A stretch of DNA of 64,000 nt, taken from sequence record MK250019.1; one strand, given 5' to 3'. The first letter of the stretch is position 1; each line of letters starts with the position of its first letter. Shown piece by piece: positions 1-64,000 of the stretch. A program made the position numbers and the translations under genes. Below the pieces are notes generated by a model. It was not told the DNA's origin, searched no databases, and saw nothing but the letters and a program-made list of their open reading frames with translations.

Positions 1-944
1 TTTAATACATAAAAATCTCCTTCTGTATTATGGATTAACCTGTTAATCCCTTTTGATGTATAACCGGTAGATATAAGTAATGCTCTATCTACTAATGTAT
101 TATATTTGTTAAATGGTGTTCTTATTTTTAGATTTAAGACTGTATTGAAATTTGTATCTGATTTTTGTCCAAGTTTTTTAAAGGTACCATCTTTATTAAA
201 TTCACAATCAATTGCAATAGGTGCAGGCATAACATATGTTTTAAAATATTCAGCTTCACCTGTTTCTGAATTACAGAAATAAAAGAAAAATACAGTAGTA
301 ATATTTCGAAGACATGTTTGACATTTATTTTCTTTTATTTCCAACTATCGCATATCATTTAAAATCTAATCAATACCTTTCATTGCATTATTAACTTTAC
401 CCTTAAATGTATTATCATCAAAGAAACTACATAAAACTGATTTAACTTCTATATATGTTTCATCTCCATTTGGATATGTTAATTTAATATCTGGACATTC
501 ATTCCTACCATTTGGTTCATGTTCAATTTTATAACCGTCAGTTTCTGAAAATATTCTATGTACAATATATTCTGATGTATCATGACATAAAGTCATAAGC
601 ATTGAATCTTTATATAACAATTTATTTTCATATGACATAAACTATGTTAATGAACCATTAAATGTAATATTTTCAGTATCCTTATAGATTTCTGTAAAAT
701 TCGGTTCTGGTAATGAAAGTGTTAAATAATAATCATCCATATAAGTATAAATGGAATTATACAATTTATAGAACTATCGTTTATACTCATCATCAGTAGA
801 ATACTCTAACCACTATCGAATACTTTCTTCCAAATCATTTGCTACAAAAATACTATCATCTAATGATGATAGAAACTATCGTCTTTCCTATGGATTATTA
901 ATACATTTAAGAATACGCTACGGACTTTTTGATTTATTTAACAT
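1..944 (-). CDS. PD-(D/E)xK nuclease-like (restriction-endonuclease-like) protein, code 15, 3' end outside window
   Basis: ATG at 944 opens a frame with no TAA/TGA down to base 1 and 8 in-frame TAG; includes track ORF 366..638; motif 'CPDIKLTYPNGDETYIEVKS' fits PD-Xn-(D/E)xK. Confidence 0.6.
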
Positions 945-989
945 TTTTTATTTTAGATTTATTTTAATACATATTATAATGAAACTGTA

Positions 990-1349
990 TTAAAAAGTCT
1001 TTTTAAAATTAATCAAAGATTCAGTTATATTTATAATTGTATCTCCTTTATAAACTGTTTCATTGAAATGATATTCATCTATAAGTTTCCCTTGTTTTGT
1101 CCGTATATTTAATTTCACATTAAAATTTAAAACATCATTATCTTCATCAGACACAATTAAATATTCATCATCAAATTTCATAATTACATGATGTTCAGAA
1201 TGTTCGTCTCCTATTAATACATTTAAATTGGTTATACAATAATTTTTAATTTTATTCTTTACAATAACATTAAATCTTTTATCTGATAATTTTCGCTCAT
1301 TATTTTTATTACCATTAAAAATATTTCTTAATAACGTAATCAATTTCAT
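990..1349 (-). CDS. hypothetical protein (119 aa)
   Basis: ORF ends TAA; co-oriented with neighbours. Confidence 0.65.
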   Translation of the reverse strand: MKLITLLRNIFNGNKNNERKLSDKRFNVIVKNKIKNYCITNLNVLIGDEHSEHHVIMKFDDEYLIVSDEDNDVLNFNVKLNIRTKQGKLIDEYHFNETVYKGDTIINITESLINFKKTF

Positions 1350-1382
1350 TTATTCTTAACAATTTATTTTCACCTAAAAATA

Positions 1383-1420
1383 AAAAGGAATATACTATCA
1401 CAATATATTCCTTTTATTTT
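1383..1420. terminator. intrinsic terminator-like hairpin
   Basis: aaaaggaatata...tatattcctttt inverted repeat with A/T tails. Confidence 0.6.
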
Positions 1421-1434
1421 ATATATTTTGTCTT

Positions 1435-3377: not shown

Positions 3378-3380
3378 AAA

Positions 3381-3436: not shown

Positions 3437-4255
3437 TTAAATAACACATTTTTCACCACAATATGGACAGAACTTAAATTTTGAATTAAGTTTTCTTCCA
3501 CAATTAGTACAATATATTTTATTCAAATCACTTGTCGTATATGGTTTCCTTGATTTAGGAAGAATCTTTATATATTCTGTTTTAAATGGATAATTTTCAA
3601 ATTCATTATTTACTGTTTCAAATTTCTGATTTGAATAACCACCATTTTCAATTCTACCTGTTTCAATAGTAGTATTATTAACATTAGTTTTATATAAAGC
3701 TTTATTATATGTATTTCCATCAATACTTGCACAACAACAGTTAGTAACATTATTTGTTAATAAAACATTATTATTAGTATCTGAACATGTAACTACAGTA
3801 TCATAACTTGGAACAGTATATGTATTTTGATTAGAAATTAATGGACTCTCTTTCCATAAAACATTTAATGTATTATAAATATTTGTTTTAATTCTTGATG
3901 ATACTCTTTCTTTATAAAACTTTACAGTAATATTACCATTATTTGCAATAGCATGTTTTACCTGCACATCATTATCATCTACTTCATAAGTAGAAAATTT
4001 AAATTTAACCTGATTATCCAAATAACGTTCTAACCATACTCTCTCACCTGGTTTCAAAACTAACATACCATCTATATCTTTACCATTAAATGTAAATGTA
4101 ACACCAATAGTAAACTGTTCAGAATTAAATAACTGAATTTCAAATTCATCATTATTGTCCATATAAACAACACGTGAATCTTCATTTGTAGAATACTCTT
4201 TCAAAAGAGATTTGTTAATAGCTAACTAAGCCATCTTCTTTTCATTAATAATCAT
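3437..4255 (-). CDS. C-terminal zinc-ribbon protein (272 aa, code 15)
   Basis: ATG at 4255 (MIINEKKMAQLAINKSLLKEY; TAG at codon 10) in frame with track ORF; C-terminal CTNCG..FCPYCG. Confidence 0.8.
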
Positions 4256-4645
4256 AAGTCATATATAATTTATTTTAAACTTATCTATTAAACTTTCAAT
4301 TCTATACAAAATTTCAAAAGTACTTGAATAATACTCAGTCTAATAGAAATATCATTATCTAATTTTAATTGTAATAGATATAAATTAAAAAATAATTTTT
4401 CAAATATAAATATCTATCTTTAACTTAATATACTATATTAATTATACTACAATATTTATAAAAAGTTTATATTTACTAATAAATTTTAAAAAATAATTTA
4501 ATGAATAAAAAATATTTACATTTCCGAAAGACTTACCTTACTAAATTCATTAAATTATTAAAAATTATAAATAAATTTTTTACATANNNNNNNNNNNNNN
4601 NNNNNNNNNNNNNNNNNNNNNNNNNNNNNNNNNNNNTGAGTTCTG

Positions 4646-4906
4646 AGAAAAAGTCTACATTTTTCTAAATATTTTTAAATTTCATTAAAAATAATTTATA
4701 ACTAATTAATATTCAATAAATTAAATAAATTAAATAAAATATTTTTCATATAAATTAATATAAAATAAAAATTCAGATCTAAATTATATAAATTTAAATC
4801 TGAATTAAAAATAAAATTTTTTCATATATTATATATAATATCTATCTCAANNNNNNNNNNNNNNNNNNNNNNNNNNNNGAGCTTTCTAGAAAAAGTCTAC
4901 ATTTTT
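4646..4906. repeat. 19-bp direct repeat agaaaaagtctacattttt (4646-4664, 4888-4906) in a ~730 bp non-coding, very AT-rich divergent region
   Basis: two identical copies, each just after an N gap; aaaaa/ttttt arms. Confidence 0.7.
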
Positions 4907-4994: not shown

Positions 4995-5534
4995 ATGGAT
5001 ATGGATTTTAATACTAAAGTATAGTTTACGAGAACACGTAATGTAAAGATGCCTAATAGAGCAAATAAGCATGATGCAGGTACAGATTTTTTTGTGCCTT
5101 ATTATAATTAGGAGTTTCTTGTTGATTTGATTAAGAAGAATACAGGTAATAAGATTTTCTATAAGATTGAGAATGATGATTTGTTTATCACTATTCCGGC
5201 TGGTGAACAGGTAATGATTCCATCAGGAATCAAGGTATGGATTAATGATAAGAGAACATATCTTCAGGCAACTAATAAATCTGGTGTTGCTTCAAAGTAT
5301 CATCTTGATGTTATGGCAAATACTATTGATGCAGATTATCAGGGAGAAGTTCATATTAATCTTTGTAATAATGGTAATACAGACATTACCGTTCAGACCG
5401 GTCAGAAACTTGTACAGTTTATTCATCAGATTTATCTTGATACTGATTGGGTTGAAATGGATGAGAAAGAATATGATGAGATTGAAGCATCAGACAGAGG
5501 TGATGGAATGGCAGGTTCTACCGGAACATTCTAA
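4995..5534 (+). CDS. dut: trimeric dUTPase (179 aa, code 15)
   Basis: read-through of TAG at 5022 and 5109 restores motif 1 'RANKHDAGTDFFVP'; downstream NKSGV, IDADYQGE, RGDGMAGSTG motifs. Confidence 0.95.
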
Positions 5535-12152: not shown

Positions 12153-14342
12153 ATGTCAAAAATAAAGAATTATCAAAAGTTAGATAAAAATTCTGTATTT
12201 AATAATTGTAGTTATGCATAGTCAGCAGGTGTTTATTATAATTAGGAAGGTTTTTCTAATGTAACAAATAAAATTTAGGATATGGGAACATATAATCCTG
12301 ATAAGTATATATTAGGAAATATAACTAAACCAAATAAGAAGACATTTGTTAATTATGATAAACATGAAATAATTAATAAAGGAAATAATACAAAAATTAA
12401 CATTAATAATATAAAGAATAATAAGGAAACATATGCGTATGTTTCTGGTATTATGGTTCCTACTATTGAAGCTGAAGTAAAACCTATTACAGAAATATTA
12501 AAAGAAACTGAAAATAATATTACAAATTCAAAAAATATAGTTATTAATAGTAAAGAATTTAAAGAATTACATAAAGAAGAAAAAGTTATTAATAATAAAG
12601 ACGTTAAACAAGTAAAATGTAAATCATCTGTAAATTTATTTTCTAAAGTATTTGAAAATAAACAATAGAATGATATTAATGATGATAATGTAATATATTT
12701 AAATGGTTGGGTATGGTTAAATAGATTTAATAAACCATATGCACATAATTTTGGTGATGATATAAATTTTTCATTTTTGACAGAAATAACAGGTAAGAAA
12801 CATAAGAAATATGATAATGAATTTGTAACAAATTATTTAATGATTGGAAGTATTTTTATTGATAAGTATATAAATGATTTTACAGAAGTATGGGGTAGTG
12901 GAATGTTAAGACATTAGGTATTATATAAAAAACCAAATAAAGTATATGCAGTTAGAGGTCCAAAAACACGAGAGATCTGTTTAGCATCAAATATAGATTG
13001 TCCGGAAATATATGGAGATCCTGCATTATTAATACCATATTACTATTATCCTTATGTAATGAAAAAATATAAATTAGGAATTATTCCACACCATTCTCAT
13101 ATTAATTCAGATATATTAAATAAATTTAAAGATAATGAAAATATTAAGATTATTAATTTTACAAAATATAATGATTGGAAAGATATAATTAAAGAAATTG
13201 TAGAATGTGAATTTATTATATCTGAAAGTTTACATGGTTTGATTATATCAGAAGCATTTAGAATTCCTAATATATGGATTTCATTAGGAAATAATATAGG
13301 ATAGAATTTGAAATATGAAGATTTCTTTTTATCTATTAATAAACCATTATATGATTCATATTTAGTAAATGAAGATACAACATATGAAGACTTATTAAAA
13401 TTAAAAGATAATTATAATTCAACATTTGAAATAGATTTACAAAAATTAGTTGATGCTTGCCCTATAAAATTAAAGAATTTAAATTTATATAATCAGATTA
13501 AACCATATACAGGAAAAGTATTATTATGCTGTATAGGAAAAATGGAAAATAATTATATACGAGAGTTTGTAGAATATTATAAAACAATAGGATTTGATAA
13601 TATATGTTTATATGATAATAATGATATAGATGGAGAACATTTTGAGGATGTAATAGGTGATTATATAGATTCAGGATTTGTAATATTAAAAAATTGGAGA
13701 GGAAAAGAATTAGCATAGATTCCATCATATACAGATTGTTATAATACATATAAAGATGAATATGATTGGATTGCATATTTTGATATAGATGAATTTTTAG
13801 ATTTAGCTTGTAATAATATAAAAGAATTCTTATCAGATGATATGTATAATGATAGAGGTATAAATTGTATAAGAGTTTGTTGGAAACAATTTACTGATTC
13901 TAATATTATTAAAACAAATGGAAATTATTCAATAACTAAATTTAATCAATATATACCATTAGATAAAGATAAATATTGTGCATAGACAAAAATTATAATT
14001 AAAACGTAGTTAGATAATATCATATTTGATTCACCACATGGTGTTATATATAATAAAGATTGTCATATTACATGTGCAAATACAAATGGTGATTTATGTA
14101 CAAATGATATAATTATAAATAATCCTACATGGGAAAATGCATGTTTAAATCATTATCGTTTTAGAACAATAGAGGAATATGTATTAAATAAAATGGTAAG
14201 ATTATGGCCAACAACATATATGAATGGCGGAAAAATGGGATTAAATTTAAATTTATTTTTCAGATATAATACATTTTCATAGGAAAAATTAGATTATGCA
14301 AATTATCTTTTAGATAAATATAATATAAGTAGAAATGAATAA
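12153..14342 (+). CDS. fused polysaccharide pyruvyltransferase (ExoV-like) and GT92/GT2-like glycosyltransferase (729 aa, code 15)
   Basis: single frame with 10 in-frame TAG and no TAA/TGA; NFGDD, GSI, VWGSG, AVRGPKT, GDPALL, LGIIPH, SESLHGLI; then FDNICLYDNN, WIAYFDIDEF, LNHYRFRTIEEY. Confidence 0.85.
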
Positions 14343-14445: not shown

Positions 14446-15411
14446 ATGAATAAAGATATACGTCCACCTCAGCATGTATTACATGTTTTCGATCCTAATA
14501 GAAAATGTAGACCACATGATGAAGTTGAGTTTATAGAAGGTCGTTATGTTGATATTGTAAATGCAAAGAATAAGGATCCACATACTTTGTATTTCGGTAA
14601 ATCAAAGAATTCTGAGCTCTTAACAGGTATTTTTTTAGGTGATCTTGAACTTACTTCAAAAGTAAAAGATGTATCTCTTGTTTCTGTTGATGGTGTTGTA
14701 ACATTATCTATTAAATATGTTAATTCTGCTGGTAAACTTGCAACTGTAAAAACAAATTTACCTTCATAGAAACTTGTTGAAGATATTAAAAAATTATTAG
14801 AATCTTTTGATACAAGTATTCTTAATAAAATTAACACATCATTCAGTGATGTATATGATAGATTAAATGTTATCGATTCATCAATAGTTGATATTAATAA
14901 TCATCTTACAGTTATAGATACTTCTGTAGGTGAATTAACAACAAGAGTAGATACATTAGATACATCATTATTAGGATTAATAGATGAACTTGATCATGGT
15001 AAGTATAATTATACAATACATGAAGATCCTGGAACATATGCAAACGGTTTCAAAAAAACATTTACTTTATTTAAAGGTGATGAAGAACAAAAAGATTCAT
15101 CTAAGATTGAAGTAACTGATATGGTGTTGAAATAGTTAAATTATGTTAAAGATAATAATGTAATTGAAGCAAAAGTTTGGCCAGAACCTATTAAGTCAAT
15201 CGATTTAATCGGTGATGTTCTTACATTAAAAGATGGTACAGTTATTAAAGATGTTATTTCATCTCTTGATAAAGATTTAATTAAAACTGTATCATTAGAC
15301 ATGAAAGGTTATGACGAACATATTAATGACTTCATGAATACTGATTCATCTATTAATGACAGATTAACTTTTGTAGAAAACCAATTGAAATGGGAAGAGT
15401 TAGATAAATAA
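14446..15411 (+). CDS. putative virion fibre/structural protein 1 (321 aa, code 15)
   Basis: 2 in-frame TAG; coiled-coil-like D[ST]S repeats; ends LKWEELDK. Confidence 0.7.
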
Positions 15412-15454: not shown

Positions 15455-17029
15455 ATGAATAAAAATATGGTTTATAGTGCTAATGAAGCAACTTCTTTAA
15501 CTGATAAAGTTGCAGATTTTACAAAGGGTAAAAACATTCACTTTGGTTCTGGTGCATTTGAAGAATAGAAAGTTGTTGCTATTGCAACAGCAGCTGAATC
15601 TGATGCAAAGGTTCGTTTCGTATATGATGCAATAGGTGATTCTGGTATGGTATTTGTTGGTAATCAACTTGCATCTTCTAAGATTCTTGACATTACAACA
15701 AATAAAGTAGCAAAGAAACATTTTGATCCTGAAACTGGTAATTATGTAGAATCAACTACAGAAAAAGTTGCAACTAAGGTAACAGTTACATGGTTTGGTT
15801 CTCAGGAAGATCCAAAAGATAATGTTGTAAAGACACAGACATGGACTACTGTATTTGATGTTATTGATACAGATACAGTAAAAGCAATGATTGATAAAGC
15901 TTCAGCAGATTTAAATAAATCAGTTGATGATTTAAAAACAAAGCATGAAGCAGACGTTTTACGTTTAGATACATCAGTTAACGGCATTGAGACACTTCTT
16001 AAGAGCGATGTAGTTTCAGCTGACACGGGTAGTGCACTTACAGTAACTCATACTGCTGCTGATGCAACAGGTTATAAGACTTATAAGGTTGCAGTTAACG
16101 TAGATGATGCAGAAGGTTCAACTATTAAGGTTGTAGATAATAAGATTAAGATTGCAAAGTATGCAATTAAGCAGGTTGCTGCGGATTCTATGGAAAAAGA
16201 TGCAGATACTAATGAAACAAAGTATGCATCTGAATATCAGTTAATGATGACTGATGCTGATGGTGTTACAAAGGCAGTTGGTGATAAGATTAACATTGCA
16301 AAAGACTTCTTAGTAACTAAGGCACATGTATGTACATTTAAGTATGTTGCTGAAAATGGCGCAGAAATTAAGTATGATGTACAACTTGAAGATCAATGGG
16401 GTAATTCTCCAGCAGTTAAATATGGAGATGAAGTAACATCAGAAAATCAGCTTCCATGGTCTAAGAATCAGGATGGTACATGGGAACAAGCACGTCTTGG
16501 TTTCGGTATTAAGTATGGTCATTCATATTTACACTTAGTTATCAATACTAAGCCAACTAATACAAAAGCTGCTAGACTTGATGATGTTTATCTTGATTTT
16601 ACAGAAATCTTTACAACATTCAAGGGTGATGATAAATTCATCAAGGTTGAGAATGGCGTTGTTTCTTTGGATATTGATGCTGTTTCATCTAAAGTTGATG
16701 AAAAACTTAAGGTTAATGATACATTCACAGAACTTAAGGCAAAAGATGAAGCAATTGAAGGTCGTCTTAATGGATTAGATACATCTGTAAGCAATATTGA
16801 GAAATCATATGTAACAGATGCATCTCTTGAAGCGCCAAAGGCAGATAATGCACAGTTCAATACTTTAAAGATTACAAATCATAAAGTTGTTGATGGTGTT
16901 GCAAAAGACACAGAGGTTACTGTAGATGTTGCAAATGAAAAATATTATGCAGGATTAAATACAGCATTAAATACACTTACAGAAAATGATAAACATCTTT
17001 CTGCACTTCTTACATGGGAAGAACTCTAA
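15455..17029 (+). CDS. putative virion fibre/structural protein 2 (524 aa, code 15)
   Basis: ATG 15455 in frame via one TAG; SSKILDITT motif; ends LTWEEL. Confidence 0.75.
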
Positions 17030-17131: not shown

Positions 17132-19075
17132 ATGGCTATTACTATTAAAAAGTCAATGATTAATGGTGCTCCAGTTATTTTTGGCGCTCCTGCTGATGCA
17201 GATACTGCAAAAGGTGTAGAAGTAAAATTTGGTTATGGTACACTTGAGAATGTACTTGCAAAAGTTGGTACTGCAGATGACGGCGTAATCTATTTCGGTT
17301 ATGATGATGCTAAATCAACTGGTGCAATTGTTTCACGCGGTAAACTTGTTTCTTCAAAAATTCTTGATATTACAACAACTGCTGCTGTAACAGGAGAAGG
17401 TGGTAAAGTAACAAAAGAAGCATAGATTGTAATTTCTTATATTGATACTGATAAGTCTGTTAAAACATTAGAAATTCCTGTTTCTGCTGATGGTAAATTA
17501 AAAGATCTTGCTGATAAGATTGAAGCTCTTAAAACATTAGTAGGTACAAAGGCAGATACTAAAGATACTGATACAGTATTCGGTGCAATTGCAAAAGAAA
17601 CAGATCGTGCAACTACTAAAGAAACTGCAATTTCCGATCTTCTTGGAACAAAGGATGATGATAAAACAAAAGAAACTGCATTTGGTAAGATTGCTACTGA
17701 AGTAGCGCGTGCAACTGATGCAGAAACAGGATTATCAAATAGAATCAAAACACTTGAAGATAAAAAGTATACAACAGTTAATGCAAAAACAGATGGTCAT
17801 GTAAAAGTTGCTGTTTCTGATGATAATGTTGTAACTGTAACAGAAGATGATATTGCATCTGCTGCACTTCTTGGTACTGTTGATGATGTTGCTGGTACTG
17901 CAACTGCATTTGGAAAGATTGCTAATGAAACAACGCGTGCAACTGATGTTGAAGGTAAGTTAGATACTCGTGTAACTAATATTGAAACACTTATAGGTGA
18001 TGCAGAAAAGCCAGATGAAGATAAAGTAATCAATAAAGTAACTGAAGTAATTGATTGGTTCAAAGGCGTTTCTGAAACCGAAAAAGGTGCAACACTTATT
18101 TCTGATGTTGCTGCTAATAAAACAGCTATTGGTACAAAAACTGTAGAAAATACTAATAGCATTTATAAGAGAATTGAAGATCTTGAAGCAAAGAAACATA
18201 CAAAAAGTGATGTAACTGCTGATGCTGGTAAATGTGTATCAGGTATTCGTGTTGATGAAAATGGTGCATTAACAATTGATCAAGCTGAATTATCTGCTGG
18301 TAATATTAATGCTACTGCAATTGTAGCAGGTGATGATACTGTTGCAGTTGAAGGTGATAAGGTTGCTTCATAGATTGAAAGTTTAGCTAAGTCTATTAAG
18401 ACTGCTACAAAGTCTGCTGATGATGCAATTAAGGCACTTGATGTTACAGATACTGCAGTAGAAGGAAAATATGTTTCTGCTGTTTCTGAAGAAGATGGTA
18501 AGATTACAGTTACACGTGCAGATCTTCCTACACTTTCTGTTAAGACAGGTTCAGAACAATTTGCAGCTGTTAATAACCATGAAGTTGAAATCAAGACTAC
18601 CGCATTAAATACTGTTGGTCTTACAAAGACTGAAGCCGGTAAATGGCAAGCAGGTACTGCTGATGCAAAATCAACTGGTCTTGCAACTGCTGCAGATGTT
18701 GCCGCAGAAATCGTATCAGATGAAGAGGTTATTGCAACAGCTCTTAATGACCATGAAAATCGTTTAAAGACAGTAGAAGGTAAAGAAATTACTGTTTCTT
18801 CTGCTAAGTATGATGTTGCTATTTCTGTTGCAGAAGTAAAAGATAGCGATGTTGTTACTACAGCTGCAACTAATTTCAATGTTACTGGTGGTAAAATTAC
18901 ATTTACTATTCATAATGGTGATAAAGCTGTTGCAGAAACAATTACTGCATATACAGAAGATACTGTTAAATCTCTTGTTGAACTTTATGCAAAGGAAAAA
19001 GCTCGTGCTGAAGCTGCAGAAGCTGATCTTGATAAGAGATTAACTTGGGTTGAATTGAATAAGCAAGACAAATAA
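17132..19075 (+). CDS. putative tail-fibre-like protein 3 (647 aa, code 15)
   Basis: TAG at 17423 and 18371 read through; repeats FGxIAxExxRAT; SSKILDITT; ends LTWVELNKQDK. Confidence 0.75.
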
Positions 19076-27438: not shown

Positions 27439-27487
27439 TAGTAATTTTTTGTATAATATTTAAATGAAAATCTAATTGAAATTAAAT

Positions 27488-50234: not shown

Positions 50235-53200
50235 ATGAAGGTAACAAAACGTGATGGTAGTTTTGAGAATTATAGTGTTTAGACAGTTAAACGTGCAGTT
50301 AGAGAAGCGTTTAAGTCAACAAAGACTAAATACTCAAAAGACACAATTTCGAATATTGTAAGTTCTATTACGCCATATGATGGCATTCCTGTAGAAGAAA
50401 TACAGGATCAGATAGAAACAAGTTTGTATTCTCATGATCAGCCTAAAGTTGCAAAAGAATTTATTCTTTATCGCAATAAGAAGAAGGAAATCAGAGAATG
50501 GGTTGCTAATAAAGAAGCATTTATTGAAAGATATAAAAATGCATCAAATACTGCAAATAGTACAATTGATGATAATTCTAACGTATCATCTAAGAACATC
50601 GGTGTATTAAATGCAGAAATTCATAAAGGTGATAATATTCTTGTAAGTAGAGGAATGATTACAAGAAAATTAAAAGATTTATTCCCTGATTTTAAAGCAA
50701 AACAATATCAAAAAGATTTAAAAAATCATATTATCTATAAGAATGATGAATCAAGTTTTGCTGGTGCTATAAGTCCTTATTGTGTTAGTGTATCTATGTA
50801 TCCATTTCTTAATCATGGATTGGAAAAGATTGGAGGATTGTCATGTCATCCACAAAATCTTGATTCCTATTGTGGTATGTATGTAAATCTTGTATTTGCA
50901 GTTGCAGCACAATTTGCAGGAGCAGTAGCAACATCAGAATTCTTGGTATATTTTGATTATTTTGCACGAAAGGAATTTGGAGATGATTACTATTTGCATA
51001 GTAAAGAATTCTATAAGATTGGTCCAAAATATCGTAAGTTACTTAATGAATCTAATTACTGGTGTAAAGATGTAGATACACTTAGAAAACATGATTTTGG
51101 TACAGATGAATTAAATAAATTGAGAGATGAACTTGTTTATAATTCGGAACGACCATTATCTGATGAAGAACTTAAAGAATATGAAACAGAACTTTCTAAA
51201 TATGATGTAGAAGGTTCAATAAAAGATTTTACAAATCCTATTAAGATTGGTGATGGTACAAGAACTATTGGTTCATGTATACAACAATTCTTCCAACAAG
51301 TAGTGTGAATTGAACGCACCCCTAATCGGTGACGATTAGGTAAACTCCATGTGAATTGCAGGGACTCTAAAATAATGAAGAAAATAATTTAATATTTTGA
51401 TTAAAAATATATACAACTTATTATAAATATTAAAATAATAGTATATATTACATGAAAATTACAGATAATAATATAGATGAAATAAAACATATGTATATTG
51501 ATGAACATCGTTCATATCAAGAAATTGCTGATTATTATAATGCAACAATATCATAGGTTAAAAATTTTTTATAGTCTAGATAGATAAAACGAAGATTTGC
51601 GCAAAGTAAATTAAATCAAGAATAGTTTGATAAAATTAAAGATTTATATTTAGGTGATAAAAAATATCCTGTATCTAAAATTTCAAAAATGTTAAATATA
51701 AAAGAATCAATAATAAGAAATTATATATTTGATAATAAATTAACAAGAAAAGAAACAGGAGATGAACGACGTTTAACAATACCATATGAAACACTATATG
51801 ATTTATATATAATTAAAAAGTTAGATAAAAATGAAATTTAGGAAAAATTAAATATATGTCGACAAACTTTAAATAAAAATTTAAAATTTTATAAATTAAC
51901 CAATAAGTATTCAAATTATACAGATAATGATATTTGTAAAATGTATAAAGATGAATATAAAAGTTTATCAGATATAAATAATATTACAAATTTTCCTAAA
52001 TCACGAATAAGATAGATTTTAATAAAAAATAATATATAGTTACGAGATTATCGTTTAAGTTAGATGACAAAAAGTAAAGCATATTTTGAGTATGATATGA
52101 GTTTATTAAATAAGCAATCTTTATTAAAGCGTAATTGCTATAGTTATTTTAAATCTCATATATCAACACAAATAAAGAAAGAACGAAATATGTGTGAATG
52201 TTGCGGTTCAACAGAAAATTTACATTGTCATCATATTAAACCATATTCATTAATTGTTAATGAGATTATAAAAGAAAATAAAAATTTATCTGATACTGAA
52301 TTATATAATGTAATTACTCATGATTCTAGATTTTTAGATACAAATAATATTAAAGTTGTATGTGAAAAATGTCATTATACGATATTTCATTCATACCTTC
52401 ATTATCAAGGGAATCGTGCAGCCAAGCCTAATAATTAGGAAGGTTCAACGACTATCGAAAACATAGAATAAACAAATAAGAGTTTATTTGAAGAAGTGAG
52501 TAGAGTACATAACAAGTGTTATGGAAGTGCATGGCAACTTAATCTAATCAATTAAGTTGGAGAAATAGTCTAAACGAATTTTTAATTCCCTCTATTACTG
52601 AAATGTAATAGTTGTCTATAGAAATATAGAGCAGTTATAAACTGAATATAAATTAACGATTTATATTTAATATATTTGATTCAATTAACCAACCCGCAGC
52701 AAGTCGTGGTCTGCAATCTGCATTTGTAAATTTCTCTTATTTTGATAAGCCTTTCTTTGAAGGTATGTTTGGGGAATTTGTATTTCCAGATGAAGAAGGT
52801 ACAAGACCTTGTTGGGAAAGTGTTTCATGGTTGCAGAAAGATTTTATGATTTGGTTTAATAAAGAGCGCCTTCGTACTATAATCACTTTCCCTGTTGAAA
52901 GTTTTGCATTGGTATATAAGGATGGAAAGTTTGTAGATGAAGATTCTGCAGATTTTGTTGCAGAAGAATATTCTCGTGGTCATTCATTCTTTACTTATAT
53001 GTCAGATACTGTTGATTCATTATCAAGCTGCTGTTTCGATGGTGATACACCATTTATGTTTGTAGAACCTCTTAATATGGAAGAGCATGGTGGTAATAAT
53101 GCATATATGGTTTCAACTATTAAAGATGCATATGAAAAATATAAAGATGATATAATTAATGTATATCATATGAATTTTAATGGTACTACAGGTAAATGTA

Positions 53201-55791
53201 CAGGTGAATGGGTAAATGCAAAATTTGTAAAAGCACAAGCTATTCAGGAAGTACGAATTTATTTTAAACCAGATGATTTCAATCCAGATGAGTCAAGGAA
53301 TGTAATGAGAGTTACGCCGGATCATATATTCCCTGTTATTGATGATAATGGATTTATTACAGATAAAAATGCATATTTATTACAGACTGGAGATCAACTT
53401 ATTTTTGAATATGCACAATATATGGGATTATTTAGAGATGAATTTCCTGATAGAGATCAAGATTTAGTAAAACGTGCTATTTCAAAAGTTGAAATTGTAA
53501 ATCTTGATGAACCAAAGGATTATTATTGTGTAGAGTTATGTGATAAAAATATTGAACCATACTTTTTGTTACCTAATGGAAATATTACACATAACTGTCG
53601 CCTTAAGAATAAGATTCAAACAAAGGAATTTAATTTTACAAATGGTAACTTAGGGATCAACTTGGGTCCTTTATGTGCTTAATTGCTAATCAAGCAATGT
53701 ATTAATATAGCGATATTAATGCATCGGTGAAGCCTAAACATAAGTTGTGAAACTATATGCATGGTAATACCGAACCAAGTTAATAAATATGTTATAATTT
53801 TACATTTATAATATATGAATAATAAAATATTTACAATTTACAAAATATCATTTCCAAATGGAAAAGTATATATTGGTTAGACATATCATTATCATTAGAG
53901 AATTAAAGAACATTTAAATGAAATGAAACATAGTGATTATAAATTATATAGAGCTATGAGGAAATATAATATAAATGAAAATAATTTTTCTATAGTAGAA
54001 GAAAATATTTTAACATAGAACGATGCAGATAATAAAGAAATATATTATATCAATTTATATGATAGTTATAATAATGGATATAATTCTACATTAGGTGGAC
54101 ATGCTGCAACAATAACAAAAATAGGAGAAGAACATCCTAAAGCTATATTAAATGATAATGAATTATTAGAATTAAGAAAAATTAGATATTCTATGAAATA
54201 TACATTTGGAGAAGTATATGATATGTATAAAAATAAAATGTCAAAAAGTGGTTTTTCAAAATATTGGCATTATTATACAAGACCTGAAATCGGAGAAGAA
54301 TATAATACTGATGAAGTAAATAAATTTTATAAATCTGATAGGAGAACAAGAAGAGGTATATTACATGCAAATTCAAGAAATTTATCAGATGAAGAAGTTT
54401 TAAATATAAGAATACGATATTTTGTAAATGGTGAAAAAGAAGATGATATTTTTAAAAAATATAAACACTTATATTCAAAGAGTGGTTTTAATAAAATATT
54501 ATTTGGATAGTCATATATGCATGTAAAAATGCCTATTAAAACAGATAAGTGTAAATAGAAATTACCATAGTTATCAAAAGAAGAAGTAATTTCATTAAGA
54601 GAACAATATAATAATGGTAAGTCTATTAATGAATTAAAAGTTGGAAAATATGAAAAATATTCAATGAATAATTTTAGAAATATGTTAATAGGTAGAACAT
54701 ATAAAAATTATTAATGTGTGTGGAGGTCATCCCCTAAGTGATGAGCAGGAGGAGTAGGGCTACTATTGATACGTAGCAGTATTTTAGGAAACGAAGTACT
54801 TTAAATGCCGAAATAGTGCAATGTTTATTAACATAATAAACATAAGATATGACCCGGACCATATAGAAATATATGGAGAAAACGTCAAACAGGTTCAAAA
54901 TCTGTAATAACATTAAATCTTAGTCGTATAACACAAGATTGGTTTAATAGTGTTAAGAAAACAGGTGTAACAAAAGAAAATGTAGAAGAACATTATGATG
55001 AATTGTGTCATTATTTTGGTGATATTCTTGATAGAGTATACAAATATCATACTGCATATAATGAACTTCTATGGGATATGTATGATGCTGGTTTGCTTCC
55101 GGTATATAAAGCTGGATTTATTAGTTTGAATAAGCAATATTTAACAATTGGATTAAATGGTCTTAATCAAATGGCAGAATTTTTAGGAATTACATGCAAT
55201 ATAAATCCTCATTATGAAAAATTATGTCAAACAATATTTGGATATATTAAGCAGAAGAATCAAGAAGCTGCAGGTATGTTTAACGGACATAAGCTCACGT
55301 TTAATACCGAGTGCGTACCAGCGGAAAGTCTTGCAATAAAAAATTATAATTGGGATAAAGAAGATGGATATTGGGTAAGTGATGATACAAATCTTTATGC
55401 ATCTTATATTTTTAAACCAAATGACAAGAGCTTATCAATTTTCGATAAAATTACATTACATGGTCGTGATTATATCGGAGATTTCTTAGATGGTGGTTCT
55501 GCGGCTCATCTTAATTTATCAGAGCATTTATCTAAGAAACAAATAAAACATATCATGCAATTTGCAGCACAGGTAGGATGTCAGTATTGGACATTTAATG
55601 TACCTAACTGCAAGTGTGAAGATTGTGGTTACATATCTAAAACACCATTTGATAAGTGTCCAAAATGTGGATCAGTTCATATAAGTTTATATGACCGTAT
55701 CATTGGATATTTAACTAAAATTTCGAACTGGTCAGATGGACGTCAACAAGAACAAAAGACACGTGTTTATCTACATAGTGAAAATATTTAA
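50235..55791 (+). CDS. nrdD: anaerobic (class III) ribonucleoside-triphosphate reductase; exons 50235-51306, 52679-53657, 54885-55791; intein 53032-53595; code 15
   Basis: ATP cone MKVTKRDG (TAG at codon 16); spliced exons total 2958 nt in frame (985 aa precursor, 797 aa after intein removal); joins read QQVVYSINQPAA, LSSCCRL, NLGIQTGS; C-terminal CEDC/CPKC and RIIGYL. Confidence 0.93.
51307..52678 (+). mobile_element. group I intron 1 in nrdD (1372 nt)
   Basis: 5' exon ends U, intron ends G; P1 GUGU|G pairs with CGCAC with U.G at the splice site; AAUCGUGCAGCCAAG element; P7 GACUAU (52450) with AUAGUC (52565). Confidence 0.9.
51452..52471 (+). CDS. intron-encoded HNH homing endonuclease with N-terminal helix-turn-helix-like repeats (339 aa, code 15)
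   Basis: 9 in-frame TAG; CECCGSTENLHCHHIKP...NIKVVCEKCH. Confidence 0.85.
53032..53595 (+). mobile_element. cis mini-intein (188 aa) in NrdD between the two Cys of SSCC
   Basis: starts CFDGDT, VTPDH block B, ends ITHN, +1 Cys; removal restores LSSCCRL. Confidence 0.92.
53658..54884 (+). mobile_element. group I intron 2 in nrdD (1227 nt)
   Basis: exon AGGGAU pairs with GUCCUU with U.G at the splice site; terminal G at 54884; P7 GGUCAU (54725) with AUGACC (54849); join gives GGG AT|T CAA (G-I-Q). Confidence 0.88.
53815..54714 (+). CDS. intron-encoded GIY-YIG homing endonuclease (299 aa, code 15)
   Basis: TIYKISFPNGKVYIG-TAG-T, R..EH, E..YI..YDS.NNGYNST.GG; 5 in-frame TAG. Confidence 0.9.
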
Positions 55792-55922: not shown

Positions 55923-56984
55923 ATGAATTATAATAAAATTTATAATAATATTATTAATAATGCAAAAAATCGAAATAATATAAACAATCAATACTTTGAA
56001 ATACATCATATTATCCCTAAATGTATAGGAGGAACTGATGATGATAAAAATTTAGTAAAACTTACATTACGTGAACATTTTATATGTCATGAATTATTAG
56101 TTAAAATATATCCAGATATACAATCATTAAAATGCGCATTATGGATTATTTGTATTACGACATTAGAAGCAAAAAAAGAATATATAACAAATAATATAAA
56201 ATATAAAAATAATAAATTACCTATTAATCATAGAGTACAACATTTTTTAAATGATTTTGAAAAACATATTAATATATCTTCAAGAGATTATGAATATTGT
56301 AGAACATTATATTATATAGCAACAAAAGGGAAAAAACGAACTGTTGAGCAATGTAAAAAAATTTCAGATGCGACAAAGCATGCTATGAAAGATCCATCTA
56401 GAGTACAATTAAGAAGAAAAGGTGTATTGGGTAGTAAATTTTATTATGATTTAATAACAAATAAATCTTATAAATGGTTTCCGGGAGATCCAGATATTGA
56501 TTTAAATAAGTATGCGTGGGGTAGAGGAAAGAAAATGAGTTTAAAATCAAAAACATTAATGTCTGAAAATTTATCAAAATATAAAAAAGTATATTATTAT
56601 AATGATAATTTAAAATCATCTACATGCTTTTGTAAAGATTAGATAAAAATATTACCTGATAGTTGGCATTTAGGAAGAAAATTCGGCGGATATAATAAAA
56701 TGAAAATATTTATTATACCATTATTAAGAAATGTACATTTTAAATTAGTATGTAATTAGCATTTTATTGATAATATATTTTATCATATTAATTTATTAAA
56801 CAAATAGGAAATAAGTATAGGTATATTAACGATTAATGAAAAAATATTAAGTGACTTAATACAAAAAAATATTGATATTAATGATGAAAAATATATTACA
56901 ATAATATATAACAATATATTAAATAATATAAACCAAATTAAAACTATTAATAATAGCGTTTATTTAAATAGTGAAAATATTTAA
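55923..56984 (+). CDS. free-standing HNH homing endonuclease (353 aa, code 15)
   Basis: NYNKIY..FEIHHIIPKCIGGTDDDKNLVKLTLREHF; 3 in-frame TAG; ends VYLNSENI. Confidence 0.85.
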
Positions 56985-59005: not shown

Positions 59006-59047
59006 AAATAGGAGAATAGTTTTTCGTATACTATTCTCCTATTTTTT
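59006..59047. terminator. bidirectional terminator between convergent blocks
   Basis: aaataggagaatagt...actattctcctattt stem. Confidence 0.8.
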
Positions 59048-62000
59048 ATTTGTCATTATTACTATTTGTATCTAATGTATTTTCATCTATATCATTATTA
59101 TTCGAAAATTCTACTTGCTAATTTGTATTTTTAGTCATGTAATTTGTAAATGTTATTAATGTGCCTGGTATTCTATCTGAACCTAATATCGCTTTTACAG
59201 ATTCCCAGAATTCTCTTTGTTTTATTGTATCTGTTCCTATATGATAATGTTTTGTTGTTGCACCTGTATCATCTCGTGCCTATTCTATATAAGCAGATAC
59301 ACCATAATCATAGAATAATTTTAATATAGTAGGACTTTTCATTATAATATTTGTCATAAGTTCAGTAAAATCCATACCGTTATTAATAATATCTATAGCT
59401 TCGCCATATAAATGTCGTGAATTATTCTTTTTAAAATACATTACTTCACCAATAGCATTCATACATTTATAATAATCATATTTTTTTATAAATGCATTAC
59501 CATCAACTTTATTACCATATTCATCTACTGCCCATCTTCTTCCAGATACTAATTTACATTTATTATCAGATTCAGATAAAATAGTTTTATAAATATCCTT
59601 CATAAAAGATTTTAAACCAGTTAATGGTATAGTAGAACCAGCTACATAATCAGATTTCTTTACATATTGATCTATCATATCCATATTAAAATTAACTGCC
59701 TCTACTGTTTCTTTTCCGTGTGCATTATATATAGTACCGGCTTCTTCTTGTTCTTGCTATTGTTCATCAGTTGTAGAACTTATATTCTATTTTCTCTATG
59801 CAGTCACGACTGCATCTTCAGATGTTGGTGCACCTTTAATATGTTCTGCTCCATATCGTTTTAATGCATCATAATATGCCATTCTAGCAAGTTTACCATT
59901 TCCAATATCTACTAATACAATAGTATTTGCTGTTTTTTTATCTATTGTTTTACCTGATTTATCTTTAATTTTAGATGGTACTGGCCATTCTCTTCTAACT
60001 AATTTAACATTTGTTCTCCAATTTGTACCCTAACCCTAATCATTATCAGTATCGAATACCCATTCAATACCATCTATAATATACCAACCAGATTCTGCTT
60101 CATACATGCATTCTTCTATTTTTGTACGTGCTTGACCAGTTCTAATAGCTTGTTCTGCTCTATTTAAATCCATTAAAACAATAGGCATTTTTTCACCACG
60201 AACAATACTTAAGTTTGCACCATTTAATTCAACAAGTAAATACTGTTTTTGTAACTATAATAAATTTCTCATATTATGTTCATATGCAACTTCATAAAAT
60301 CTATGAGTATTTCCAGATGACATCATATTATTTCCGGTTCCTTCAAGATTTGCTGCATCTCCATCAGATTGTTGATTTGTAATTTTCTCTGGTTCATTTT
60401 TATTTGATGATTGAGTTTCTGAAGTAGCCATTGCAGAATCACCACTTGCATATGTCATATTTCTTCCAGGTCCTAATAATACGAAGAAATCATTATCTGC
60501 TCGTGTTGGATCAAATTTTGTTCTATTTAAACATAATGAAAATTCAACACTATAATTAGGATTATTTGGATCTATTAAACCTGTGTTAACTGATGAATAT
60601 TGCATTTTACAATTTAATCCCACAAAATCCTATATTTCCTATGCATTATTAAGTAATCTCCAATTATTAACATGATATACTGTTGCTGCTTCATTATCAT
60701 CTGTAATATTAGTAAATATCTTTGTCTATATATGCGGTTTTACTTTCTATTCTTCATCTGTTTTAGTTGCTGCTTTACCATCAATAGCTCTATTATTAAT
60801 AAATGTATTTGTCCAGAATGTCATATCTATTGATTCATCATAACCACTTTCACCTAATAATCTATTAATATTCATGAAAGATAATCCATATCTCGGATCT
60901 ATCCATGATTCAAAAAATGAATTAGAATCTTTCCATGCATGTGTTGTCAAATCATGTAAAAACATTTCTGGTGATTTACAATTACACCAAACCATTACAT
61001 CGTTTGTATCATCTGGATCACAAAAGAAGAAACTTAATCTTAAACGTTTTGCAAGATCCATCATAGCATCTCGTGATGAACCATTAAAATTATATCTAGA
61101 TTCTTCATTTCTTAAATCTGGTACATATAATTCTCCGGTTATAATCTATGTCTAATATTTCTGATATTGCGTCTAATCCATCTAATCAGAAACAACATTT
61201 GTAATTCTGAAATCACATCTCATAGACTTAATCATTGCATGTCCACTCTGAAAAAATACACTGCATCTATCACCTTGCTTTACAAAATCCTTTTTTAATA
61301 AACCAGGGTCTGATGTAGTTACTATAAGTCTCATCGTAGGTAAAACACCTGTTAATGGCATTTGATAAATTTCATACTCATTATAATTCTTATAATAACC
61401 GGTTTCCATAGAAAAATGCTATATTTCTGTAGATTCAAAATAATGATCATTTATACGAATTATAGGATATACGGCACCTTTATTATACCATTGATTCTCT
61501 TTAATATTAGGACTTGTTACATCCGGTACTGAAATACCAATTACATTGGGATCATCAATATTAGCACCTAATGGTAATGAACTACGAGGATTATCTTTAT
61601 CTTTATTTCCCATTGAATCCTCAAATATACCTTTATTTGAAGAATCTTTAGAACCTTTACCATTGCCATCAGAATCATTTGCGTTATCTCCAGTATGTGA
61701 TGTATTCTTATTTGTTCCTGAAGAATCATTCTCTGACTCATCATTTGTATTAGAATTATCATCATTACTTCCATCAGAATTAGATGTATCTTTATTAGAT
61801 GTATCAACCATATCTAATATTTTATCTTCATCTGATTTTGAATAACAAACACCACCATATTTTCCTGAACCATAATCAATAGTATAATTAAAAAAATCTT
61901 TCTTTATTATCTAATTTGTTGTTACATCTTTATATACTTTTGTTTCTGTATATAATTTTGCATTCTTACCTTTAAATATGATATTATAAGTATTATTTAT

Positions 62001-62087
62001 TGTGTCAGTATAATAATAATGTGTTATAGTTTTATCTGATGATACTTCTCCTTTTTTTAAATATTTAATACCATTTATCGTTAACAT
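59046..62087 (-). CDS. baseplate-hub-like protein with C-terminal peptidase M15-like domain (1013 aa, code 15)
   Basis: five track ORFs share one frame with 18 TAG and no TAA/TGA; 'SGWYIIDG...VKLVRREWPVP' hub-type ending; SRHLYGEAIDI...HYHIG zinc motif. Confidence 0.7.
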
Positions 62088-62089
62088 AA

Positions 62090-63148
62090 TTATTTAGATT
62101 TCTTTGTATTTTTATTTGTATTAGATTTATCTGTACTATTAGTTTTCTTATCTGATTTACCGGTAGATGTATCTTTTTTACCAATGGATGTATCTGCAGT
62201 TTTTTTTGCTACGTCCTCTTTAGTAATACCTTGATTTGCATATTCTATAGCTGGATCATTTGAATTATATGGTATTTTTAATTCATCTAACACAATACAA
62301 GAATCATTTGTAGAATATATACGTGTATGACTACTTGCAAATTGATCTTTTGATGTAAACATTGTTTGTTTAGATGTTGCTGATGCAGTTTGAAATGCAT
62401 TATCTTTTGAATTTTCAAATATATTACCACCTTGACCGGTAAATGTTTGATATTCATCATGTACAGGATATGCATTAGAATTTCCCATACCTGCACCACC
62501 AGTATCACCAAAACCACCACCGTCTAAACCACCGCCAGAAACTTCAGTACCTAATCCTGATAAATCAGCTAAGTTTACAGAACCCATTTTACTTAATACT
62601 GCATTTGCCCATGATGTTCTGCATGTTAGTGCACCAATATATCCATCTTTAAATGTACGTCTGCTACCATCTGCCATATATGATGTTTTACACCATGTAT
62701 ATGATTTCATAGATTGCTATGAACGTAATCTTGTTCCTTTACCTGCAGAACCATTTTCATAACCGCGTAGCACAATATCAGTTGATTGTCCAACTGATGT
62801 AGTTTTTCTTAACAAATTAATAAATGATTCAGAGCATCCTTTTGTTACAATAGCTATTTGCTAATCTAATGACCAATTTTCTATAGGTCTAGAATTATTG
62901 AATTGTCTCTATATTTGACGTTTCCATGCATTAGACCATTGTGCAAGTCCGGCACCATATCCGGAACCATTTGCAGATGAACCTTTAAATCTTCCAGATT
63001 TTTCAGCAGCGTTATATGCTCCAGGATCACAACCAGATTCTTCCATAAAACATCCTGCAAATCCAGCAGCCTAGAAATCTTTAAGATGCCATGTATCCAT
63101 TATTTTCTTTGTTATATAAACACCATTTAATAATTTTTTACCTGCCAT
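62090..63148 (-). CDS. phage tail lysozyme-domain protein (352 aa, code 15)
   Basis: 4 TAG; FQAAGFAGCFMEESG...GAGLAQW...LRGYE pattern of tail lysozymes. Confidence 0.8.
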
Positions 63149-63154
63149 AAATCA

Positions 63155-64000
63155 TTAACCATTAGTTTTAACTGAACTATTTACTATATTTAATGTTGTC
63201 GTATTTGATGAAACACTAGAATCCCAAGGATTTATTGGAATTGATAATTCGTCTAATACGATAGAAGAATCATTTGTTGAATATATACGAGTTGTTTTTA
63301 AATTCATTACTGAAGAATCATTCATCTATTTATATGCTGTAGAATCTGTATATGTTAATCTTAATTTATTTTCACCAACTATTTCAAATACAGATTTTGA
63401 ACCATTACCTGATGCAATAGTTTCATATTCATCATGTACAGGATATGTATTTGAAGTATAATTAAATTGTGAACCTGCACGACCATTAAATGTACCACCA
63501 ATACCATATCCTGTATTCATTTGTTGTTGCATTGTATTTCCATTAACAGAAGAAAAATCTAATGGTGTATCAATGCTTACACCAGAATTTCGCCATATAA
63601 TAGAATATCCTGGTTTAATTGATGTATAACATGGCATACCTGCTCGTTTTTTTCCATTTGGACCTGGTCGTCCATCATGTATATTTCCCCATGCGTATGA
63701 CATAAAAGAAGATCCGTTTTTTCCATAAAATACTTCAACATGACCATTTCTTGCAATTATATCGAATGGCTATAATAGTGTAAATCCTGAAAATCGTAAT
63801 GGAGAGAAACCTGCTTTTTTAAGATACCTTGCAGTTGTACTTGTAGTAGATGCAAATTCATGTGAAGATACAAGATAAGATTTTGGAAACGCACCAAATA
63901 ACTATAAACATGCTGATGTAAAGCCTGAACAATCATCTCCTACACTATTACCTAATAAAGGACATGAATACATACGTCTTGATCCTGTTGCATGTCCAGA
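63155..64000 (-). CDS. NlpC/P60-like cysteine peptidoglycan hydrolase, 5' end outside window, code 15
   Basis: GDDCSGF catalytic Cys and LQPFDIIARNGHVEVF His motif in one frame with 3 TAG; TAA at 63155. Confidence 0.8.

What the first reader, a model, noticed from the sequence alone, without database searches (positions are those of the whole stretch)
1..64000. Stop codon TAG is reassigned to glutamine throughout (code 15 phage)
Seen: every gene end I checked is TAA or TGA. In-frame TAGs fall inside conserved proteins, and read-through restores motifs: dUTPase motif 1, the HtpG N-terminus, the NrdD ATP cone, RNA ligase motifs I versus III-V, and a 1013-aa frame with 18 TAG but no TAA/TGA. TAG sits where Gln is expected (GIY-YIG 'YIGQT', tail lysozyme 'QAAG'). 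Established: TAG-to-Gln recoding is known in Lak megaphages of Prevotella and some crAss-like phages. Consequence: about 20 genes here are fragmented or missing in standard annotation.
Basis: partly seen in the sequence, partly recalled or inferred. Interest (0 to 1): 0.72.

Follow-up and report, generated by a model that had tools for sequence, protein, structure and literature searches.

The report
Lak megaphage reads TAG as glutamine

Summary
The window is 100% identical to Prevotella phage Lak-A2 (MK250019.1, bases 323866-387865). Devoto et al. 2019 described TAG-to-Gln recoding, a CUA suppressor tRNA and a phage RF2 in this very genome.

- **Coding density:** reading TAG as sense raises ORF coverage from 77% to 89% in the window, and from 66% to 90% genome-wide. 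The control TGA=W gives 79% and 68%.
- **TAG use:** 22 of 73 window genes carry 90 in-frame TAGs, up to 18 in one 1013-aa frame. All 73 genes end in TAA (67) or TGA (6).
- **Which amino acid:** in codon alignments with Lak-B1 (about 80% identical), TAG pairs with TAG 453 times and with Gln codons, mostly CAA, 497 times out of 1382 other pairs. That is 36%, against a 2.2% background. Gln beats every other amino acid by about 1500 log-likelihood units.
- **Machinery:** outside the window the genome encodes a Gln-like tRNA-CUA and an RF2, but no RF1 and no GlnRS.
- **Correction:** "throughout" overstates TAG use, since 51 of 73 genes contain no TAG.
- **N runs:** they have exactly the length of the letters they replace in the record and do not affect the conclusion.
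- **Side leads:** nrdD is interrupted by endonuclease-bearing inserts, and TAGs cluster near the 5' end of sparsely recoded genes.

The parts
3..944 (-). ORF running off the window's left end, 314 aa read, 8 in-frame TAG; function unknown
3437..4255 (-). 272-aa ORF with 1 TAG at codon 10. The start is ambiguous, because the table-11 ORF starts at 4204, after the TAG.
4587..4878 (.). Two N runs (4587-4636, 4851-4878) in an ORF-free AT-rich spacer (4256-4994). Each is followed by GAAAAAGTCTACATTTTT.
4995..5534 (+). dUTPase, TAG at codons 10 and 39; motif I lies upstream of the table-11 start
12153..14342 (+). 729-aa protein of unknown function, 10 TAG; 5 are TAG and 1 is CAA in Lak-B1
14446..15411 (+). 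321-aa protein with weak tail-protein similarity, 2 TAG (Lak-B1: TAG, CAG)
15455..17029 (+). 524-aa protein, 1 TAG at codon 38; identity to Lak-B1 is 0.65 both before and after the TAG
17132..19075 (+). 647-aa protein, 2 TAG (Lak-B1: GCA, CAG)
19858..21555 (-). 565-aa homing endonuclease, 6 TAG. A database fragment of a Lak relative ends exactly at TAG 370, and that column is Q in 74 of 141 distant homologues and in 3 of 8 cultured standard-code phages.
26977..27438 (+). 153-aa ORF, 4 TAG, function unknown
27476..28036 (+). 186-aa nucleotide kinase, 4 TAG
29711..30733 (+). 340-aa ORF, 1 TAG at codon 43
34406..35902 (+). DnaB-like helicase, TAG at codons 22 and 98; holds N run 34439-34462 (8 codons), so its start is not certain
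35969..36460 (+). 163-aa ORF, 1 TAG at codon 39; no family match
36848..38386 (+). RNA ligase; the TAG at codon 265 splits it into two table-11 ORFs
44294..46333 (+). HtpG chaperone, TAG at codon 11, conserved as TAG in Lak-B1
50235..51308 (+). nrdD first coding piece with the ATP cone, TAG at codon 16 (TAG in Lak-B1); the NrdD match ends at 51020
51452..52471 (+). HNH homing endonuclease inside the first nrdD insert, 9 TAG
53815..54714 (+). GIY-YIG homing endonuclease inside the second nrdD insert, 6 TAG
55923..56984 (+). homing endonuclease downstream of nrdD, 3 TAG
59046..62087 (-). 1013-aa protein of unknown function, 18 TAG and no TAA/TGA. In Lak-B1 the same sites are 9 TAG, 6 CAA, 1 CAG, 1 AAT and 1 AGA.
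62090..63148 (-). 352-aa protein with similarity to a tail tape-measure family (the N-terminal lysozyme-like motif is judged by eye only), 4 TAG (Lak-B1: CAG, TAG, TAG, TAG)
63155..63973 (-). 272-aa ORF, 3 TAG (Lak-B1: TAG, TAG, CAA)

Best explanation
The window is part of Prevotella megaphage Lak-A2, which translates UAG as glutamine (NCBI code 15).

Shown here:
- In-frame TAGs sit inside conserved coding sequence.
- They evolve like Gln codons.
- No gene ends in TAG.
- The same genome, outside the window, encodes one robust tRNA with anticodon CUA. Its acceptor stem (U1-A72, G2-C71, G3-C70) and D arm resemble the phage's own tRNA-Gln(CUG).
- The genome also encodes a TAG-free RF2 gene (GGQ present; SPY where, from my own knowledge, the canonical RF2 motif is SPF). 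It has no RF1 and no GlnRS.

Inferred:
- The host glutaminyl-tRNA synthetase charges the suppressor tRNA.
- Phage RF2 keeps termination at UAA and UGA efficient while the suppressor outcompetes host RF1 at UAG.
- Two thirds of the genes are TAG-free and readable in the host's standard code. TAG-bearing genes (large presumably structural proteins, homing endonucleases, and some enzymes with one early TAG) can be completed only once the suppressor is present. This would make the code change a timing switch, as Borges et al. proposed.
For: - Identity: 100% to MK250019.1.
- ORF coverage: 77% rises to 89% in the window and 66.4% to 90.1% genome-wide, against 68.4% for TGA=W.
- In-frame TAG: 90 in 22 of 73 genes, and all stops are TAA or TGA.
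- A2 versus B1 codon alignments: 453 TAG-TAG pairs, and 497 of 1382 TAG-sense pairs are Gln (CAA more often than CAG). Log-likelihood is Q -3385, K -4881, null -4335.
- 61% of A2 TAGs are TAG or Gln in B1, against 61% self-conservation of canonical Gln.
- Protein identity to B1 is as high before the first TAG and after the last TAG as in the rest of each gene.
- Canonical Gln codons are depleted in TAG-bearing genes (1.98 against 2.58 per 100 codons), and TAG makes up the deficit.
- tRNA-CUA scores 60.5 bits against Rfam.
- RF2 scores 406 bits, above its cut-off; RF1 is below its cut-off; GlnRS is absent.
- Literature for this genome: PMC6784885. Timing model: bioRxiv 10.1101/2021.08.26.457843.
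Against: - No peptide evidence exists for Lak phages. The metaproteomic proof of code 15 concerns crAss-like phages only.
- Charging of the tRNA-CUA with Gln was not tested.
- Cross-family column tests are only moderately informative. Most TAG columns are variable, and part of the protein databases is itself translated with TAG=Q, which makes those tests partly circular.
- The temporal switch is an inference from which genes carry TAG. No time-resolved data exist for an uncultured phage.
- The genome also has a tRNA with anticodon UUA whose role is unknown.
Confidence: 0.95

Rival explanations
1. TAG is still a stop codon, and the interrupted frames are pseudogenes, sequencing or assembly errors, or split genes.
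For: Under table 11 the window still gives 77% coverage, and many genes are intact.
Against: - 453 TAG positions are conserved as TAG in Lak-B1, and the flanks stay in frame and conserved on both sides.
- A 1013-codon frame with 18 TAG and no TAA/TGA cannot arise by chance in 26% GC DNA.
- Domains and motifs are restored only by read-through.
- No gene shows the short random tail expected after a real TAG stop.
Confidence: 0.01
2. TAG is a sense codon for a residue other than glutamine (for example Lys, Glu, Tyr, Trp or pyrrolysine).
For: ARAGORN labels the CUA tRNAs 'Pyl' by convention. K and E are the next most frequent partners of TAG.
Against: - Gln is favoured by about 1500 log-likelihood units.
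- The K/E/N/S partner profile equals that of canonical Gln.
- CAA, which is two mutations away from TAG, is the commonest partner.
- The tRNA-CUA shares its acceptor stem and D arm with the phage tRNA-Gln(CUG).
Confidence: 0.02
3. Code 15 is constitutive and has no regulatory role. The patchy use of TAG only reflects gene age, origin or drift, not a timing switch.
For: - TAG occurs in replication and nucleotide-metabolism genes as well as in presumably structural ones.
- There are no expression-timing data.
- Devoto et al. found transcripts of TAG and non-TAG regions in all samples.
Against: - TAG use is strongly clustered: 51 TAG-free genes against 28.9+-2.8 expected.
- RF2 is TAG-free.
- In sparsely recoded genes TAG is concentrated in the first 30 codons, 51 against 24.4+-3.4 expected. 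Drift does not predict this.
Confidence: 0.25

Closest known systems
Lak megaphages of Prevotella, genetic code 15 (Devoto et al. 2019, PMC6784885)
   Same: It is the same genome: Lak-A2, MK250019.1, 100% identity. The paper reports coding density below 70% under code 11, TAG read as Gln, patchy TAG use that is high in structural regions, a CTA-anticodon tRNA, and RF2 in all genomes. All of these were reproduced here.
   Different: Nothing essential differs. Added here are a codon-level Lak-A2/Lak-B1 substitution test for Gln, a 3'-end test against TAG termination, and the gene-by-gene list for this window.
Stop-codon recoding as a regulator of late and lytic genes (Borges et al., bioRxiv 10.1101/2021.08.26.457843; Nat Microbiol 2022)
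   Same: - Code-change machinery is written in standard code (shown here for RF2, which is TAG-free).
- Presumably structural genes are recoded.
- A recoded intron-borne homing endonuclease sits in an otherwise standard-code gene. Here these are the HNH and GIY-YIG genes inside nrdD.
   Different: That work does not mention a 5'-proximal concentration of TAG in sparsely recoded genes (a text search found nothing).
crAss-like phages with code 15, validated by metaproteomics (Peters et al. 2022, PMC9523058)
   Same: [quoted passage not shown]
   Different: It is an unrelated lineage with a genome about three to four times smaller. Peptide proof exists there but not for Lak.

Membership tests
Lak megaphage (Prevotella phage Lak-A2) | Nucleotide identity to the published Lak genomes | tested here: met
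   100% identity to MK250019.1 at four anchors with one shared offset; 98-99.6% to Lak-A1 and Lak-C1; 75-80% to Lak-B1 to B9
Genetic code 15 (TAG = Gln) | In-frame TAG inside conserved protein-coding genes, with ORFs restored by read-through | tested here: met
   90 TAG in 22 genes; coverage rises from 77% to 89% in the window and from 66% to 90% genome-wide; domain models span the TAGs
Genetic code 15 (TAG = Gln) | TAG positions correspond to glutamine in relatives | tested here: met
   497 of 1382 sense partners are Gln, against a 2.2% background. Gln wins by about 1500 log-likelihood units. Cross-family columns are supportive but weaker.
Genetic code 15 (TAG = Gln) | TAG is not used as a terminator | tested here: met
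   Stops are TAA 67 and TGA 6 in the window, and 512 and 62 genome-wide. There is no excess of TAG near 3' ends.
Genetic code 15 (TAG = Gln) | A suppressor tRNA with anticodon CUA | tested here: met
   Lak-A2 144866-144938(-), Rfam 60.5 bits, Gln-like acceptor stem and D arm. It lies outside the window, which has no tRNA.
Genetic code 15 (TAG = Gln) | Release-factor set that spares UAG (RF2 present, RF1 absent in the phage) | tested here: met
   prfB model 406 bits (cut-off 370). The prfA model hits the same locus below its cut-off. The ORF is TAG-free with GGQ and SPY.
Genetic code 15 (TAG = Gln) | Peptides with Gln at TAG positions | not testable with these tools
   No proteomic data are at hand, and the published proof concerns crAss-like phages only.
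Genetic code 15 (TAG = Gln) | The suppressor tRNA is charged with glutamine | not testable with these tools
   No phage GlnRS was found. Charging by the host enzyme is inferred.

The most novel reading that the evidence does not exclude
In Lak genes that carry only one or two TAGs, the TAG is preferentially placed within the first 30 or so codons. Window examples are HtpG at codon 11, NrdD at 16, dUTPase at 10 and 39, and the DnaB-like helicase at 22. This suggests a cheap translational gate: otherwise standard-code genes yield only a very short peptide until the suppressor tRNA accumulates.

Genome-wide, 51 such TAGs lie in the first 30 codons, against 24.4+-3.4 expected. The share of Gln sites written as TAG falls from 0.56 (codons 1-10) to 0.06 (beyond codon 120). 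Heavily recoded genes show no gradient.

The main caveat is start-codon miscalling. A simulation, once scaled, allows about 18 artefacts. Codon log-odds and the excess of third-position substitutions against Lak-B1 instead suggest that only about 15-20% of these 5' stretches are non-coding.
Probability: 0.35. Interest if true: 0.5.

Novelty: already known. Interest (0 to 1): 0.15.

Why it matters
For annotation, reading this region with table 11 breaks or truncates 22 of 73 genes, including HtpG, NrdD, dUTPase, an RNA ligase, a DnaB-like helicase and the large presumably structural proteins. Code 15 must therefore be used. Biologically it is a textbook case of a virus that rewrites the meaning of a stop codon inside a standard-code host. 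That case has been published for this exact genome since 2019, so its value here is as a positive control for the scan. The two side leads are the parts that might add something new: the 5'-proximal TAG 'gates', and an nrdD invaded by two TAG-rich homing-endonuclease inserts plus a possible mini-intein.

Tried and rejected
- A whole genome for the window is not held. I reached the Lak-A2 record through a locus handle instead.
- PDB sequence searches found nothing for ORF 35969-36460 or for the RNA ligase.
- HtpG alignments to PDB chains start just after the TAG, so they say nothing about that column.
- The GIY-YIG column test first looked strong, with Q in 49 of 96 distant homologues at 'YIGxT'. 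The protein collection turned out to hold proteins translated with TAG=Q. In 13 homologues named by JGI or NCBI the column is mostly F. I kept only the CAA codon found in a 54%-identical relative.
- A second ARAGORN tRNA-CUA call (145771-145845) has no Rfam support at E<=1 and is not counted.
- Rfam finds no group I intron in or around nrdD. An apparent TAA 'inside' the second nrdD piece lies at the edge of the match and is not a read-through.
- The putative mini-intein has no PDB or NCBIfam match.
- The window piece between N runs 1 and 2 found no megablast match, probably because of the low-complexity filter.
- The theta-ribozyme paper does not mention Lak.
- Locus L001 spans two of the masked sites. 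I used it only as a handle, and I did not read or use its letters at those sites. The Lak-B1 stretches syntenic to the masked sites were not fetched.
Full report
**What the window is.** A 1.9-kb probe from the window is 100% identical to Prevotella phage Lak-A2, MK250019.1, a 541,299-bp circular genome assembled from a metagenome of human faeces. Further probes at window 3000, 12153 and 59046 match the same record with the same offset of 323865. The window is therefore Lak-A2 323866-387865. GC content is 26.5%. Lak-A1 and Lak-C1 are 96-99.6% identical, and the baboon Lak-B phages are 75-80% identical.

**Assembly gaps.** The offset is the same on both sides, so the N runs replace exactly as many letters as the record holds and no frame shifts across them. 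For runs 1 and 2 this is shown only for their combined length, because the 214-base piece between them found no match. Runs 1 and 2 lie in a 740-bp AT-rich spacer without ORFs. Run 3 is 24 N (8 codons) near the start of the DnaB-like ORF 34406-35902. Only that gene's start and its first TAG are touched. I did not read the masked letters in any record. Genome-wide scripts used the window's own letters with N, and the Lak-B1 stretches syntenic to the masked sites were not fetched.

- Coverage by non-overlapping ORFs of at least 60 aa rises from 77% (table 11) to 89% with TAG as sense. The control TGA=W gives 79%.
- For the whole genome the figures are 66.4%, 90.1% and 68.4%. This reproduces the "<70%" reported in the paper.
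- Under TAG=Q the window has 73 genes, ending in TAA (67) or TGA (6). 22 of them hold 90 in-frame TAGs.
- The 1013-aa frame with 18 TAG and no TAA/TGA exists as described.
- A terminator role for TAG would leave short random tails after the last TAG. There is no such excess: genome-wide, 18 genes have their last TAG in the final 10 codons, against 24.5+-3.6 expected.

- dUTPase 4995-5534: motif I lies between the two TAGs and upstream of the table-11 start.
- HtpG: the family model aligns from its first position only with read-through of codon 11.
- NrdD ATP cone: TAG at codon 16.
- RNA ligase: the TAG at codon 265 separates 'GKMHG' from the downstream motifs. The motif names come from my own knowledge of the Rnl2 family; the PHROG profile spans the TAG.
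- 'QAAG': Lak-B1 has CAG at that site.
- 'YIGQT': a relative has CAA at that site.

**Which amino acid?** The strongest test is codon-level comparison with Lak-B1, which does not depend on anyone's translation.
- In the window, 25 TAGs are TAG in B1. Of 66 TAG-versus-sense pairs, 28 are Gln, mostly CAA, which is two mutations away from TAG.
- Genome-wide there are 453 TAG-TAG pairs and 1382 TAG-sense pairs. Of the latter, 497 (36%) are Gln, against a 2.2% background.
- The log-likelihood is -3385 for Gln, -4881 for the next best (Lys) and -4335 for background composition.
- The non-Gln partners of TAG (K, E, N, S, T, D) match those of canonical Gln.
- 61% of A2 TAGs are TAG or Gln in B1, the same as the 61% self-conservation of Gln.
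- Protein identity to B1 is as high before the first TAG and after the last TAG as elsewhere in each gene.
- TAG-bearing genes are depleted in CAA+CAG (1.98 against 2.58 per 100 codons), and TAG fills the gap.

**Cross-family tests** are supportive but weaker.
- In the 565-aa homing endonuclease, the column of TAG 370 is Q in 74 of 141 distant homologues. It is Q in 3 of 8 cultured standard-code phages, with R, K, H or T in the others.
- A database fragment of a Lak relative ends exactly at that TAG, which shows the fragmentation in existing annotation.
- The GIY-YIG test was partly circular, because the protein collection holds entries translated with TAG=Q.

**Machinery.**
- The window has no tRNA.
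- Elsewhere Lak-A2 has 33 Rfam tRNA matches.
- One is a robust tRNA with anticodon CUA at 144866-144938(-), scoring 60.5 bits. Its acceptor stem and D arm resemble the phage tRNA-Gln(CUG).
- A second CUA call has no Rfam support.
- There is also a tRNA with anticodon UUA.
- One release-factor gene is present. It passes the RF2 cut-off (406 bits) and fails the RF1 cut-off. It has no TAG and no frameshift, and it carries GGQ and SPY.
- Lak-B1 has an RF2 as well.
- No GlnRS was found, so charging by the host enzyme is inferred.

**Known or new?** Known. Devoto et al. 2019 describe, for Lak-A1 and Lak-A2, the low coding density under code 11, TAG read as Gln, the patchy use of TAG with high use in structural regions, the CTA-anticodon tRNA and RF2. 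Borges et al. give the early-standard, late-recoded timing model. They also note a recoded intron endonuclease inside an early gene. Peptide proof exists only for crAss-like phages.

TAG is not used throughout. 51 of 73 genes have none, against 28.9+-2.8 expected if TAG were spread evenly over Gln sites. Genome-wide, 353 of 574 genes are TAG-free.

**Side lead 1: nrdD.** The NrdD family model maps to three pieces: window 50499-51020, 52654-53034 and 54886-55770.
- The first insert carries an HNH endonuclease gene with 9 TAG.
- The second carries a GIY-YIG gene with 6 TAG.
- The nrdD pieces themselves hold a single TAG.
- The second piece also contains a 189-aa stretch (53032-53598) that begins 'CFDGDT', has 'TPDH', and ends 'THN' followed by 'CRL'. 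This looks like a mini-intein by motif only, judged from my own knowledge of intein blocks.
- No Rfam, PDB or NCBIfam match supports intron or intein status.

**Side lead 2: 5' bias of TAG.** Genome-wide, 86 genes carry only 1-2 TAGs (111 in all).
- 51 of those TAGs lie in the first 30 codons, against 24.4+-3.4 expected when TAGs are dealt among each gene's own Gln-type sites.
- The TAG share of Gln sites falls from 0.56 (codons 1-10) to 0.06 (beyond codon 120).
- Genes with three or more TAGs show no gradient.
- Miscalled starts are the obvious artefact. A noncoding-sequence simulation predicts about 22 such cases, or about 18 by my own scaling to the 52 TAGs seen upstream of called starts.
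- Two independent checks suggest only about 15-20% of these 5' stretches are non-coding. Codon log-odds are 0.083, against 0.183 for real 5' ends and -0.340 for intergenic pseudo-starts. The excess of third-position substitutions against B1 is 1.83, against 1.95 for gene interiors and 1.34 for pre-start stretches.
- 19 of the 34 aligned 5' TAGs are TAG in B1.
- I regard the bias as probably real but unproven. Its reading as a low-cost translational gate is a hypothesis.

Noticed in passing
window 50235-55791: nrdD (anaerobic ribonucleotide reductase) is in three coding pieces: 50499-51020, 52654-53034 and 54886-55770. The inserts between them carry an HNH homing endonuclease (51452-52471, 9 TAG) and a GIY-YIG homing endonuclease (53815-54714, 6 TAG). 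The nrdD pieces hold only one TAG. Rfam finds no group I intron. More distant Lak-like contigs also have a GIY-YIG gene between ATP-cone and NrdD fragments (L036-L038).
   Followed up: partly
window 53032-53598: A 189-aa in-frame stretch in the second nrdD piece. It starts 'CFDGDT', contains 'TPDH', and ends 'THN' before 'CRLKNK', splitting a 'SSC|CRL' site. It looks like a mini-intein by motif. It is TAG-free and conserved in Lak-B1, but has no PDB or NCBIfam sequence match.
   Followed up: partly
Lak-A2 genome-wide; in the window HtpG (44294-46333), nrdD (50235-), dUTPase (4995-5534) and the DnaB-like gene (34406-35902): In genes with only 1-2 TAGs, the TAG is concentrated in the first 30 codons (51 observed, 24.4+-3.4 expected). 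Heavily recoded genes show no such gradient. Start-calling artefacts explain part of it, but probably not all.
   Followed up: partly
window 4647-4664 and 4889-4906: Two exact copies of GAAAAAGTCTACATTTTT, each just downstream of an N run, in a 740-bp ORF-free AT-rich spacer. 0.03 copies are expected by chance. It may be a repeated intergenic element; Devoto et al. mention large, highly expressed intergenic regions.
   Followed up: no
Lak-A2 211337-211409(-), locus L016:1500-1572: A tRNA with anticodon UUA (57.7 bits against Rfam), which would read UAA, is encoded even though TAA ends 89% of the genes. Its role is unknown. The paper mentions 'multiple types of suppressor tRNAs'.
   Followed up: no
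Lak-A2 287218-288354, locus L032:1474-2610: The phage RF2 has 'SPY' where, from my own knowledge, RF2 normally has the stop-codon-recognition tripeptide 'SPF'. The gene has no programmed frameshift and no TAG.
   Followed up: no
window 31749-32858, 24749-26671, 10791-12056: TAG-free genes for a ribosomal-protein-S1-like protein (S1 domains), a PepO-like M13 endopeptidase (640 aa) and a GMP-reductase/IMPDH-like enzyme. These are unusual cargo for a phage.
   Followed up: no
window 51452-52471 versus L034:11685-12648: At the same place in nrdD, Lak-B1 carries an HNH endonuclease only 31% identical to the Lak-A2 one, while the flanking nrdD pieces are 81-94% identical. The endonuclease appears to have been replaced.
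   Followed up: no
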